This document shows positions 4,201-7,200 of a stretch of 64,000 nucleotides of DNA, in pieces. Under the pieces are notes generated by a model. That model did not search any database, was not told the DNA's origin, and worked only from the letters and a program-made list of their open reading frames with translations. The DNA is taken from assembly GCF_964188315.1 (NCBI RefSeq), contig NC_135657.1:53506001-53570000 (forward strand). Reading direction: 5' to 3'. How positions within the stretch are numbered: the stretch's first letter is position 1; every line of letters starts with the position of its first letter. The stretch is from Podarcis muralis (Eukaryota). Both the position numbers and the translations under genes were made by a program.

Positions 4201-7200
4201 TGGGGATAGAAGGGGATTGGTGAAAGGGAATTTTAAGAATAATTTTAGTCACATTACAAATACGTGATGTTTATATGGTTTGGGGTGCAGGGAGCGAAGA
4301 GGCTTTCTCCACCTGTCTGAATTAATTGGTGTCCCCTCCGTCTCTCTGTGTGTGTAGTCAGAAAGGAATCCCTTTCACTTGCTTTCTGGAACTGTAGCAG
4401 TATTTGTCTACTGTATTAAATGAAGTCTATTTCCTAAGACTCCCTCCCCTCCCTCAAGAATTTACAAAGCGTGGAAGGAGGAGTGTTGTATGCTAGGATC
4501 AACCACCACATACTTAATTTTCCTCCAAACCAATTCACACAATCATGGGGCATGCTATGGGAACTATAAAACCAAGCTGCAATGTACACTAGTTTTGTGC
4601 TGCTATTTATGCATGCAGAACTGCAATCCTCTGCACAGCAAGCAGCGCTGTTGCAAAACTGGCTTGGGAAAGGCAGTGGGCAGTAGTTTCAGGTCATCAT
4701 CAGATGACTATGAATCTGCCATCAGTAGTTTCAAAATTAAGTTTAAATTTAAGCTACTAAGATACATTAAAGCATAGCCACTAAAGATGCTTAGCCATTT
4801 TCATGTATCCTGGAGGGGGCAGTCACAATGGGTAAACACAGCTACAACACAGCTACAACACTGTTAACACCTAACTTGTCGTAATCAGCCTGACTTTGAA
4901 TAAAATGCCTGGGTTTTGTGGGGCAGATAATCAACCAAAATTAGAGGTTGTCTATGTGGATATTTAATGTCTTAAGGCTAGATTCAACTAAGGACTTGTG
5001 CTAGCTCAAAAGCATTTTCTCAGCTTGCCAACCTCTCAACTGGCTCTTTGGGTGGTCAGGAAAACCCCTAGAACAGCATATGCAGGTGGAGGAGAGGGAG
5101 GATTGTTTCATCTGGCAATGTGATATGCTTGCACTGATGGAACAATTTCCATAATGTTACGCTGAATTGCTCCCCAATAGTTTCTTCCACAGAAAAGTGC
5201 TCCTGAAAGTCCTCTCAAAATAGAGACTGAAGCTCTCAGCTTCCATCACACTTTATAAACCACAGAGACTATTTGGGGTTTCCTCAAGTGTGAGAACTAT
5301 ACAGTGCACACATACTCTATGCAGGCTTTCTAATCTTGGTCTTCACAGGAAGCTGCCTTGTTATGAGTCGGACCACTGGACCATCTAGCTCAGTAGTGTT
5401 GAAACTCAGTGGCAGTGGTTCCCCAGTATTTCAGAAGATAATCTTTCTCAGCCACACCTGGGGACTGAAGCTGAGCCATTTTGCCTGCAAGGCAGATGCT
5501 CTGCCACTGAGCTATACCCCTTCTCCAAATACCCTAGGACAGGGGTCTGCAACCTTTAAGACAAAAAGAGCCACTTGGACCCGTTTCCGAAGAAAAACAA
5601 CAACTGGGAGCCGCAAAACAAGCCAAATGTAAATAACCACACATTCTTCCCCTTCCCCCATTCTCTCTCTTTTCCCTGAGTCTATTTCAGATAGCAAAGA
5701 GGGGTATGGTACCTCTCATATCCATTTTTTGCAAAGCACCATGTGCATAGAGGGCATTATACAAATTAATACATAGGAAAGTGTCTGTCCCTCCCTGCAG
5801 TTCAACTCCCTCTCTTTTTGCTAACAGCTCATATCCATTCCTTCTGCTGGTGCAACTTTCTCATCATTTCTACATAGCAGCATTTATAAACCAGTGCCAG
5901 TGAAACTGGGTGAAAAGAAGGTGAGAGGGAAGAGATATGAATATTTATGTGTGTATATGTATACATACATACATACACCTACACAATTACAGGTTTGAAG
6001 CCAACTTAAAATAAAAAGAGCTGGTAAGCAAAGGAATCTGTGGTGCTTTCCATGGGATCCGGGGACATGTCAGCTAATACTCTTCCCTTTCTTCTTCATT
6101 TGCTTGTCTCTGCAGCAAATCTCGAGGGGGAAGGAAGAAGGGCAGGAATTGCATAGGCACGAGAGAACGGGGGAAATCCCGCATGCAGGATTTTGGTGCC
6201 TAACAGCTCCCCCTCCCTCTGCAATTGCTCTCGTGCTCCCCGCCTCTCTCCGAGGCCGAGATGCTGCATCACGGCACCTGCTGGCTACCTCTGGACCCCC
6301 TCCTCGTCACTGACGTAATTCACCCCTTCCTCCCTGACAGGGAGGGCGGGCCCATTTTGTGGTTCACCTCAGATGCTCTCCCTCAACTCGGCGGCCACTC
6401 AGAAGCAAGGCACGGAAAAGGATCCCGAAGCACCACCGCCACCCCTCACACACACATACACACACACACACACACACACACACCCCGCCCCGCCATTTCC
6501 CTCGAGCGTGCGTGCTCTCTCTCTCCCTCGCCTCAGGTGCCTCGCACACGGGGCTGAGGAGAGCGTGGCCTGGGAGAGCGTTCCCCCTCGCCGCCTCCGC
6601 TGCCCGTCCTACCCCGGGGGAAGCTATGAGCCATGAAGCCGCCTGGCAGAACTTCCCTCCGGCGGCGGCAGCAGCAGCAGCCCTTCTCTGGCCGCCGCCG
6701 CCTCCTCCTCCATCCCAGCAGCCGCCGCCTCTCGAGTTCCGCCGCCGCCGCCGCCTTGCTTTGCCCGGCTCGGCTGCCCAGCTCCATCCCCCTCCTCTTT
6801 CTGGCGCTTCTGCTTTTCTGCTCAGGGTCCCCGAGGATCCCCGCGGCAAAGGTGTAAAAGAGCCGCGGGTTGCTGACCCCTGCCCTAGGACAAGAACCCC
6901 CAACCTTTCTTGGTCTGCAGGCACATCTGGAAATCCAAGAACCTGCTGTGGGAAACACAAAATACCCATTTCCCAGTAGAAAAACTGGTGGTGCTCAGGA
7001 CTGCTCCCCCCCTGCAAAAAAAGCACCCTGCAGACAAAACACATACACCCAAACCAAAAAAAGCAAACATCAAAAGCCAAACCTCCAAGGTGTAAAGCAA
7101 TTCCCCAAACAATGCAGAAAAGGGCAGGCAGAACACCCCTTCACCCTAAAAACAAGCAGGAAAAATACTTCCATCCACTTCAGCAACCAATCAAATACAA

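What the first reader, a model, noticed from the sequence alone, without database searches (positions are those of the whole stretch)
6300..6857. The cargo looks like the promoter and start of ADAM23
Seen: ...agctatgagccATGAAGCCGCCTGGC opens a 74-codon frame, [20 protein letters not shown]...[36 protein letters not shown]. It has an Arg/Pro/Ala-rich extension and then a hydrophobic core, and it stops only in the transposon end (GTGTAA). Known, from recall: human ADAM23 begins MKPPGSSSRQPPLAG...RLLLVLLLLPPLAASS, an unusually long signal sequence under a CpG-island promoter, and it is not linked to SNX9 in human. Inference: the donor is lizard ADAM23 exon 1 with about 1 kb of upstream DNA.
Basis: inference. 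Interest (0 to 1): 0.8.

Follow-up and report, generated by a model that had tools for sequence, protein, structure and literature searches.

The report
Transposon-carried gene start, ADAM23 unproven
A small cut-and-paste (hAT) transposon in a wall-lizard gene intron carries a stolen piece of host DNA that looks like a gene's promoter and the start of its first coding exon. I could not confirm that the gene is ADAM23, and elements like this are already known in animals and in this same genome.

Summary
An ATG-started 74-codon frame lies at 6633-6857 (+). Its peptide is as quoted, and its stop codon lies in the right arm of a 1,343-bp non-autonomous hAT element (5540-6882, 8-bp target duplication CCCTAGGA). 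The cargo is 5620-6840 (1,221 bp): about 1 kb of upstream DNA, then a CpG island (GC up to 0.72, CpG o/e about 0.8) and the first 69 codons.

The "captured host 5' gene end" reading is supported:
- Two related species have the empty site.
- Those species still hold the cargo sequence elsewhere, and the match stops exactly at the cargo borders.
- The cargo differs from those copies by about 1.3%, against about 3.4% for the intron flanks.
- GC is highest at the third codon position (0.83).
- RNA assemblies of three species hold parts of the exon-like piece.

The ADAM23 name could not be tested. No search returned a reptile ADAM23 or any true relative of the peptide. The name rests on recall: the MKPPG start and a long leader before the hydrophobic core.

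In the one stranded RNA run laid, only thin cover with the host gene's direction crosses the ORF.

The scan has met the same kind of element before on other DNA of this genome (RANBP9, PPAT, SPR cargos). This is a new member of a known kind.

The parts
5532..5539 (.). Left copy of the 8-bp target-site duplication CCCTAGGA
   Evidence: The empty-site joint 5531->6883 in two other species removes the element plus one copy of the duplication.
5540..5619 (+). Left arm of the non-autonomous hAT element (TIR CAGGGGTCTGCAACC at 5540-5554)
   Evidence: 94% identical over 80 nt to the plain 280-bp MITE at 13298-13577.
5620..6840 (+). Cargo: 1,221 bp of host-derived DNA that replaces the ~140-bp MITE core
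   Evidence: Borders come from blastn against the plain MITE. An X6 contig matches 5620-6293 and then runs on for 577 nt of unlike sequence. An X2 contig matches 6718-6839 and then runs on unlike.
6200..6880 (.). CpG-island part of the cargo (GC 0.59-0.72, CpG o/e 0.57-0.83)
6311..6318 (+). CRE-like octamer TGACGTAA, with GC boxes within 40 nt downstream
   Evidence: Read directly from the sequence. Function is inferred only.
6447..6483 (.). (CA)18 microsatellite inside the cargo. No contig was seen to bridge it.
6633..6857 (+). 74-codon ATG frame. Codons 1-69 (6633-6839) are cargo; the last 5 codons and the TAA stop come from the right arm.
6841..6882 (+). Right arm of the hAT element (TIR 6868-6882), with a 12-bp internal deletion relative to the plain MITE
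6883..6890 (.). Right copy of the 8-bp target-site duplication CCCTAGGA
7346..7438 (-). Host-gene exon (SNX9-family BAR domain). The element sits in the adjoining intron, with the cargo ORF antisense to this exon.
   Evidence: Pfam PF10456, E 1.8e-12. RNA reads have the same direction over the exon and the intron.

Best explanation
Stretch 6300-6857 is the GC-rich 3' part of a 1,221-bp piece of host DNA (5620-6840) carried inside a 1,343-bp non-autonomous hAT transposon. The piece has the build of a gene's 5' end. It holds about 1 kb of upstream DNA, a CpG-island promoter region, a leader, and the first 69 codons of a protein with a long Arg-rich N-terminus followed by a hydrophobic signal or anchor segment.

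It was copied from a locus that still exists in related species. The likely route (inferred, not shown) is template switching during repair or replication of a plain MITE, which replaced the MITE core with foreign DNA. The loaded element, or a plain MITE loaded afterwards on the spot, landed in an intron of an SNX9-family gene after this lineage split from two sister species.

The exon fragment lost its own 3' end and splice donor, and it runs into a stop codon in the transposon arm. In the one stranded RNA run laid, no reads of the direction expected for sense transcripts cover it, so it is most likely an inert passenger.

The donor's name is not settled. ADAM23 is the leading candidate, which I put at about 0.4, on recalled N-terminal features only.
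For: - Element anatomy: the TIRs, the exact 8-bp TSD and the arms match a plain MITE of the same family in this window. Other hAT MITEs in the window also have 8-bp TSDs.
- Empty site: DNA contigs of organisms B and D join 5531 to 6883 and skip 1,351 nt, which is the element plus one TSD. Contigs of organism A cover both junctions (5152-5561 and 6794-6957).
- Donor-like locus: in B and D the cargo stands elsewhere, and the match ends at 5620 and at 6839, exactly the borders set by the MITE comparison.
- Constraint on the source: the cargo differs from those copies by 1.2-1.3%, against 3.4-3.5% for the intron flanks (Fisher p 0.003 and 0.006).
- Promoter and exon features: CpG o/e is about 0.8, GC3 is 0.83 against 0.65 and 0.62, and there is a hydrophobic core at residues 50-62.
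- Transcript support: 'RNA?' contig sets of organisms A, K and L hold 0.20-0.36 of the sampled words of 6540-6840.
- Passenger status: stranded RNA reads over 6396-6881 are all first-mate-on-plus, the same as over the minus-strand host exon, and none have the other direction.
- Precedent: Pack-TIR elements, mostly hAT, are described in animals (PMC8277862). Scan notes report the same kind in this genome.
Against: - No protein relative of the 74-aa peptide was found anywhere.
- The ORF length is within chance for this composition (0.16). A second ATG 6 nt upstream opens another long frame.
- The donor-like locus was seen only as short contigs of other species, not in this genome.
- Those contigs have 3-6 times the word depth of the unique flanks (88.7 against 14-16, and 29.5 against 10). 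The source may therefore not be single-copy, or loaded copies may exist in those species too.
- One X6 contig over 6738-6822 differs at 7 of 85 letters, which hints at a further, older copy.
- No contig bridges the (CA)n repeat, so the cargo could be two stitched pieces.
- The runs marked 'RNA?' are guessed types. One of them (X1) covers the promoter part and intron flanks but not the host exon, so it does not show a spliced mRNA.
Confidence: 0.7

Rival explanations
1. The donor is a gene other than ADAM23. The peptide would then be the start of some other secreted or type II membrane protein with a long basic N-terminus, and the shared MKPPG start is coincidence.
For: No ADAM-family hit came from any search. 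Only 5 leading residues and a general layout link the peptide to ADAM23, and both come from recall. The donor-like contigs have 3-6 times the unique depth in two species, which is unexpected for a single-copy gene such as ADAM23.
Against: A leader of about 50 residues before the hydrophobic core is unusual, and by recall ADAM23 shares it. The searches could hardly have seen a full-length reptile ADAM23: word searches were length-limited, and the exhaustive search covered only 50% representatives. The blanks are therefore not evidence against ADAM23.
Confidence: 0.4
2. The ORF is a chance open frame. The cargo would be a non-coding CpG-rich region (a promoter of a non-coding RNA, a leader only, or a low-copy repeat), not a coding first exon.
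For: 16% of composition-matched random sequences give such an ORF. Other frames on both strands are open for 87-238 codons here. No protein homologue was found. Contig depth is above single copy, and 12 different X2 contigs hit position 6548.
Against: GC is highest at the third codon position in exactly this frame. The ATG has a purine at -3. The n-region and h-region are laid out like a signal peptide. Parts of 6540-6840 stand in RNA assemblies of three species. The source is conserved beyond the neutral level.
Confidence: 0.15
3. The captured island is not inert. It stays unmethylated and open, and works as a new promoter, antisense or bidirectional, inside the SNX9-family intron of this species.
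For: CpG o/e is still about 0.8. The X1 contig set of organism A (type guessed) covers 5152-7043 around the element but nothing over 7044-7500, host exon included. That looks like a local peak rather than plain intron signal.
Against: The raw stranded RNA run shows only thin cover, with the host gene's direction, and none of the opposite direction over the ORF. High CpG o/e can simply mean the insertion is young. The tool warns that holes in contig cover prove nothing.
Confidence: 0.15

Closest known systems
Pack-TIR / Pack-hAT elements of animals (Tan et al. 2021, Nat Commun, PMC8277862)
   Same: A non-autonomous TIR transposon whose core is replaced by host sequence. hAT is the commonest carrier (208 of 370 cases). 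Capture of a 5' UTR piece by a frog hAT element is described. The proposed origin is template switching.
   Different: Most reported animal cases are single-copy and arose on the spot in a resident TE, so the outgroup carries the plain TE. Here the outgroup site is completely empty, so a whole element arrived after the split. The cargo is long (1.2 kb) and is a promoter plus exon start rather than a random fragment.
Pack-MULEs of rice and other plant Pack-type elements (PMC5861414, PMC8903248)
   Same: Gene fragments carried between TIRs. They are often GC-rich 5' parts of genes and are sometimes transcribed.
   Different: The superfamily differs (Mutator, 9-bp TSD), and the hosts are plants. 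Those elements run to thousands of copies. Nothing here shows expression of the fragment.
Other Pack-hAT elements noted by this scan in the same wall-lizard genome (RANBP9, PPAT, SPR and IRAK1-like cargos)
   Same: Same genome and same kind of hAT ends. The cargos are CpG-island promoters with first-exon starts. Empty sites in other lizards were reported for some.
   Different: The cargo is different. The copy number of this one is unknown. Those notes were not checked here.
ADAM23 exon 1 and its CpG-island promoter (mammalian gene, from recall)
   Same: The peptide starts MKPPG. About 50 residues precede the hydrophobic core. A Ser-Pro-Arg-like stretch follows the core. A CpG island lies over exon 1.
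   Different: No sequence comparison with any ADAM23 could be run. Residues 6-50 show little likeness to the recalled mammalian sequence. The donor-like sequence may be present in more than one copy.

Membership tests
Pack-TIR (Pack-hAT) transposon | Terminal inverted repeats of a known TIR family at both ends | tested here: met
   CAGGGGTCTGCAACC at 5540-5554 and its inverse, with 1 mismatch, at 6868-6882. The arms match the plain MITE at 13298-13577.
Pack-TIR (Pack-hAT) transposon | Target-site duplication of the superfamily's length (8 bp for hAT) | tested here: met
   CCCTAGGA on both sides. The empty-site joint in two species skips the element plus 8 bp.
Pack-TIR (Pack-hAT) transposon | Internal sequence is non-TE host DNA with a parental copy elsewhere | tested here: inconclusive
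   Arm-free copies whose match ends at the cargo borders were seen in contigs of two related species. No such copy was seen in this genome, because the assembly was not searchable. Depth suggests more than one copy.
Pack-TIR (Pack-hAT) transposon | No transposase gene of its own | tested here: met
   The element is 1,343 bp. The ORFs listed are GC-rich open frames, and Pfam finds nothing in the 74-aa frame.
ADAM23 first exon | Peptide aligns with the N-terminus of ADAM23 of reptiles or other vertebrates | not testable with these tools
   No ADAM23 sequence could be obtained. Searches with the peptide returned no ADAM protein. Such a blank is expected even if the claim is true.
ADAM23 first exon | The arm-free copy lies at the 5' end of the ADAM23 gene and splices to its exon 2 | not testable with these tools
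The single read-laying run showed no spliced reads.
CpG-island promoter | GC above 0.55 and CpG o/e above 0.6 over more than 500 bp | tested here: met
   GC 0.59-0.72 and CpG o/e 0.68-0.83 over about 6300-6900.
CpG-island promoter | Transcription starts there | tested here: not met
   No reads of the direction expected for sense transcripts over 6396-6881 in one stranded RNA run of unknown tissue. This speaks for this copy in that sample only, not for the donor.
Secretory signal peptide or signal anchor | Basic n-region, hydrophobic h-region of 10-15 residues, then small residues | tested here: met
   10 Arg in residues 1-48. The core [12 protein letters not shown] has a Kyte-Doolittle mean of about 3.0 and is followed by SGSP. 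No dedicated predictor was available.

The most novel reading that the evidence does not exclude
In wall lizards one hAT MITE family repeatedly loads itself with CpG-island promoters and first-exon starts. The scan notes this cargo plus RANBP9, PPAT, SPR and IRAK1-like ones. The copies would keep promoter-like chromatin after landing, so the family would scatter ready-made promoters through introns of other genes. Here that would be a species-specific antisense promoter in an SNX9-family gene.
Probability: 0.15. Interest if true: 0.65.

Novelty: new member of a known kind. Interest (0 to 1): 0.35.

Why it matters
Gene-fragment capture by cut-and-paste transposons is common in plants but scarce in vertebrates, where it is mostly single-copy. 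A lizard hAT family that keeps picking up promoters with first-exon starts, and is young enough that sister species still show empty sites, would be a natural system for two questions. One is how such capture happens. The other is whether moved promoters rewire host genes. On its own this copy adds one more cargo to that list. The gene's name matters little for the mechanism, but it would let the capture be dated against its donor.

Tried and rejected
- **Word-based search with the 74-aa peptide:** nothing at E<=10. Only proteins of 41-130 aa were candidates.
- **Exhaustive phmmer against 1.84 billion representatives:** one hit, P0001. It is a translated tandem repeat that scores by summed weak repeats, so I rejected it.
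- **Opposite-strand open frame over the cargo used as a stand-in for a DNA search:** none.
- **Alignment of the peptide with a long filler protein, to get past the length window:** only relatives of the filler came back, and none matched the peptide by blastp.
- **Exact look-ups of seven cargo ORFs in the assembly collection:** none on record.
- **PDB phmmer:** chance hits only (seipin, an aminotransferase).
- **Protein atlas:** best score 0.59, meaningless.
- **Rfam:** only sub-threshold microRNA noise at the (TACA)n and (CA)n repeats.
- **Two exact-pattern scans of metagenome contigs for host contamination:** none.
- **Full-text search for MKPPG:** nothing relevant.
- **blastn of the cargo against the window:** no second copy in these 64 kb.
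- **CCTAGG as part of the TIR rather than the TSD:** rejected, because other copies of the family have unrelated 8-bp duplications and the empty site keeps one copy.
- **Contig depth as a copy count:** not used, because SINE-like words inside the cargo (6365-6400) inflate contig means.

Full report
**What is in the sequence.** It runs 6633..6857 on the + strand, starts with ATG, has 74 codons, and gives the peptide [20 protein letters not shown]...[23 protein letters not shown]. It lies in the GC-richest part of the neighbourhood, with GC 0.59-0.72 and CpG o/e 0.68-0.83 between about 6300 and 6900. Just upstream are a CRE-like TGACGTAA (6311-6318), GC boxes and a (CA)18 repeat at 6447-6483.

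**The carrier.** CAGGGGTCTGCAACC occurs at 5540-5554, and its inverse, with one mismatch, at 6868-6882. Both ends are flanked by the exact 8-bp repeat CCCTAGGA. A plain 280-bp MITE of the same family lies at 13298-13577.
- blastn against that MITE gives a left arm of 5540-5619 (94% identity) and a right arm of 6841-6882, which carries a 12-bp deletion.
- The cargo is therefore 5620-6840, 1,221 bp in place of the ~140-bp MITE core.
- The plain MITE and another hAT-type MITE at 53212-53517 have their own, unrelated 8-bp duplications. CCCTAGGA is therefore a target duplication and the superfamily is hAT.
- The stop codon of the frame (6855-6857) lies in the right arm. Only 69 codons belong to the cargo, and the exon's own 3' end and splice donor were not taken along.

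**Is the frame more than chance?** Its length is not. About 16% of random sequences of this composition hold an ATG frame of 74 codons or more. Other frames on both strands are open for 87-238 codons here. Another ATG 6 nt upstream opens a different long frame. Three things speak for this frame:
- GC by codon position is 0.65/0.62/0.83.
- The ATG has a purine at -3.
- The peptide has a basic leader (10 Arg in 48 residues), then a hydrophobic core at residues 50-62, then SGSP.

**Is the cargo captured host DNA?** One read-laying run on 5100-7500 was allowed, and it gave the strongest evidence.
- DNA contigs of two other species (organisms B and D) join 5531 directly to 6883. They skip 1,351 nt, which is the element plus one target duplication. 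This is the empty site.
- Contigs of organism A, the species that holds the insertion, cover both junctions (5152-5561 and 6794-6957).
- B and D nevertheless hold the cargo sequence elsewhere. A 1,248-nt contig matches 5620-6293 and then continues for 577 nt of unlike sequence. Other contigs match 5647-5761, 5732-6395, 6293-6436 and 6718-6839, and the last again runs on unlike. The match thus ends exactly where the comparison with the plain MITE puts the cargo borders.
- The cargo differs from these copies at 1.2-1.3% of sites, whereas the intron flanks differ at 3.4-3.5% between the same species (Fisher p 0.003 and 0.006). The source is therefore more conserved than neutral intron DNA, as an upstream regulatory region would be, and the copy cannot be old.

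**Open points from the same call.**
- The donor-like contigs have 3-6 times the word depth of the unique flanks.
- Twelve different contigs of one species hit position 6548.
- One contig over 6738-6822 differs at 7 of 85 letters.
- Part of this comes from SINE-like words inside the cargo (6365-6400 resembles the SINE at 5340-5530). It may also mean that the source, or loaded elements, exist in several copies in those species.
- No contig bridges the (CA)n repeat, so I could not show that the upstream part and the exon-like part are one continuous piece at the donor.

**Transcription.** The host exon next to the element (7346-7438, minus strand) is an SNX9-family BAR-domain exon (Pfam PF10456, E 1.8e-12).
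- In the raw stranded RNA run, the thin cover through the intron and cargo has the same direction as the cover of that exon.
- There is no read of the opposite direction over 6396-6881. In that sample of unknown tissue the ORF is not transcribed in the sense direction, and what is seen looks like host pre-mRNA.
- A second run search with 6540-6840 alone found contig sets guessed to be RNA, from organism A and from two further species. They hold 0.20-0.36 of the sampled words. This suggests the exon-like part is in transcripts of several species. I could not lay these runs, so this is a hint only.

**The name ADAM23.** This is the part I could not test.
- The exhaustive phmmer search gave a single hit, which is a translated tandem repeat.
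- The word-based searches, PDB, the Atlas, exact look-ups of seven cargo frames, metagenome scans and a full-text search for MKPPG all came back empty.
- None of these could be expected to reach a full-length lizard ADAM23. The blanks neither support nor weaken the name.
- From recall, mammalian ADAM23 starts MKPPGS.SR and has about 50 residues before its hydrophobic core. The lizard frame shares the first five residues and this unusual layout. I put ADAM23 at about 0.4.

**How it most likely arose.** Pack-TIR elements are documented in animals: 370 in 100 genomes, 208 of them hAT (PMC8277862). Most are single-copy and made on the spot by gap filling with template switching. A few are multicopy and moved after loading. 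Here the outgroup site is empty, not occupied by a plain MITE. Either a loaded element transposed in, or a plain MITE inserted after the split and was loaded in place. The depth excess in the sister species leans towards the first option, but this is inference.

**Context in the scan.** Notes of this scan report the same kind of element elsewhere in this wall-lizard genome. Their cargos are the 5' ends of RANBP9 (hundreds of copies), PPAT (10-20 copies, empty sites in other lizards), SPR and an IRAK1-like gene. I did not check those notes.

**Verdict.** The reading 'captured promoter and start of a first exon' is supported. The donor's identity as ADAM23 is untested. This is one more member of a known kind of element, already met by this scan in this genome. 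The interest lies in the family-wide habit of taking gene starts rather than in this copy.

Noticed in passing
window 4040-4150 (+), 7346-7438 (-), about 1241-1300 (-): The SNX9-family exons do not share one strand. The ETNHEY...GAHK exon (7346-7438) and the last exon (...SRFPMM*, near 1241) read on the minus strand. The exon between them ([11 protein letters not shown]...MSYALQ, about 4040-4150) reads on the plus strand, right beside the 200-N gap at 3729-3928. RNA read direction is uniform over 5181-7448, so any flip is confined to the part near the gap.
   Followed up: partly
window 13298-13577: A plain 280-bp hAT MITE of the same family as the carrier, in opposite orientation, with TSD TTTCAGTC/TTTTAGTC and a CpG-rich core. 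I used it as the reference for the arms.
   Followed up: yes
window 53212-53517 and about 10139-10417: Two further hAT-type MITEs with related TIRs (CAGGGGTAGGCAACC, and CAGAGGTGGGCAA.../...GCCGACCCCTG). Their 8-bp duplications are GTTTAGAA, and ACCTTAAT/ACCTAAAT. They belong to different families with different cores.
   Followed up: no
window 5340-5530: A tRNA-derived SINE copy ends a few bases before the insertion site. It draws thousands-fold depth and many loose ends in all runs. A short SINE-like stretch also lies inside the cargo at about 6365-6400.
   Followed up: partly
window 5152-7043: The contig set X1 of organism A (type guessed as RNA) covers the element and about 400 nt on each side, but nothing over 7044-7500, host exon included. 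This looks like a local peak (open chromatin or a local transcript) rather than ordinary intron signal. The tool warns that holes prove nothing.
   Followed up: no
window 5829, 5901, 5916, 6135: At these four cargo sites the window differs from organism A's own contig and from both sister species, which all agree. They are either changes private to this copy or allele, or marks that tell this copy from the donor.
   Followed up: no
window 1940-2290: A GC-rich block (GC 0.54-0.59) that reads like another tRNA-derived SINE (...GGATTCGAACTGCCGACCTTTCG...). It is not a gene feature.
   Followed up: no
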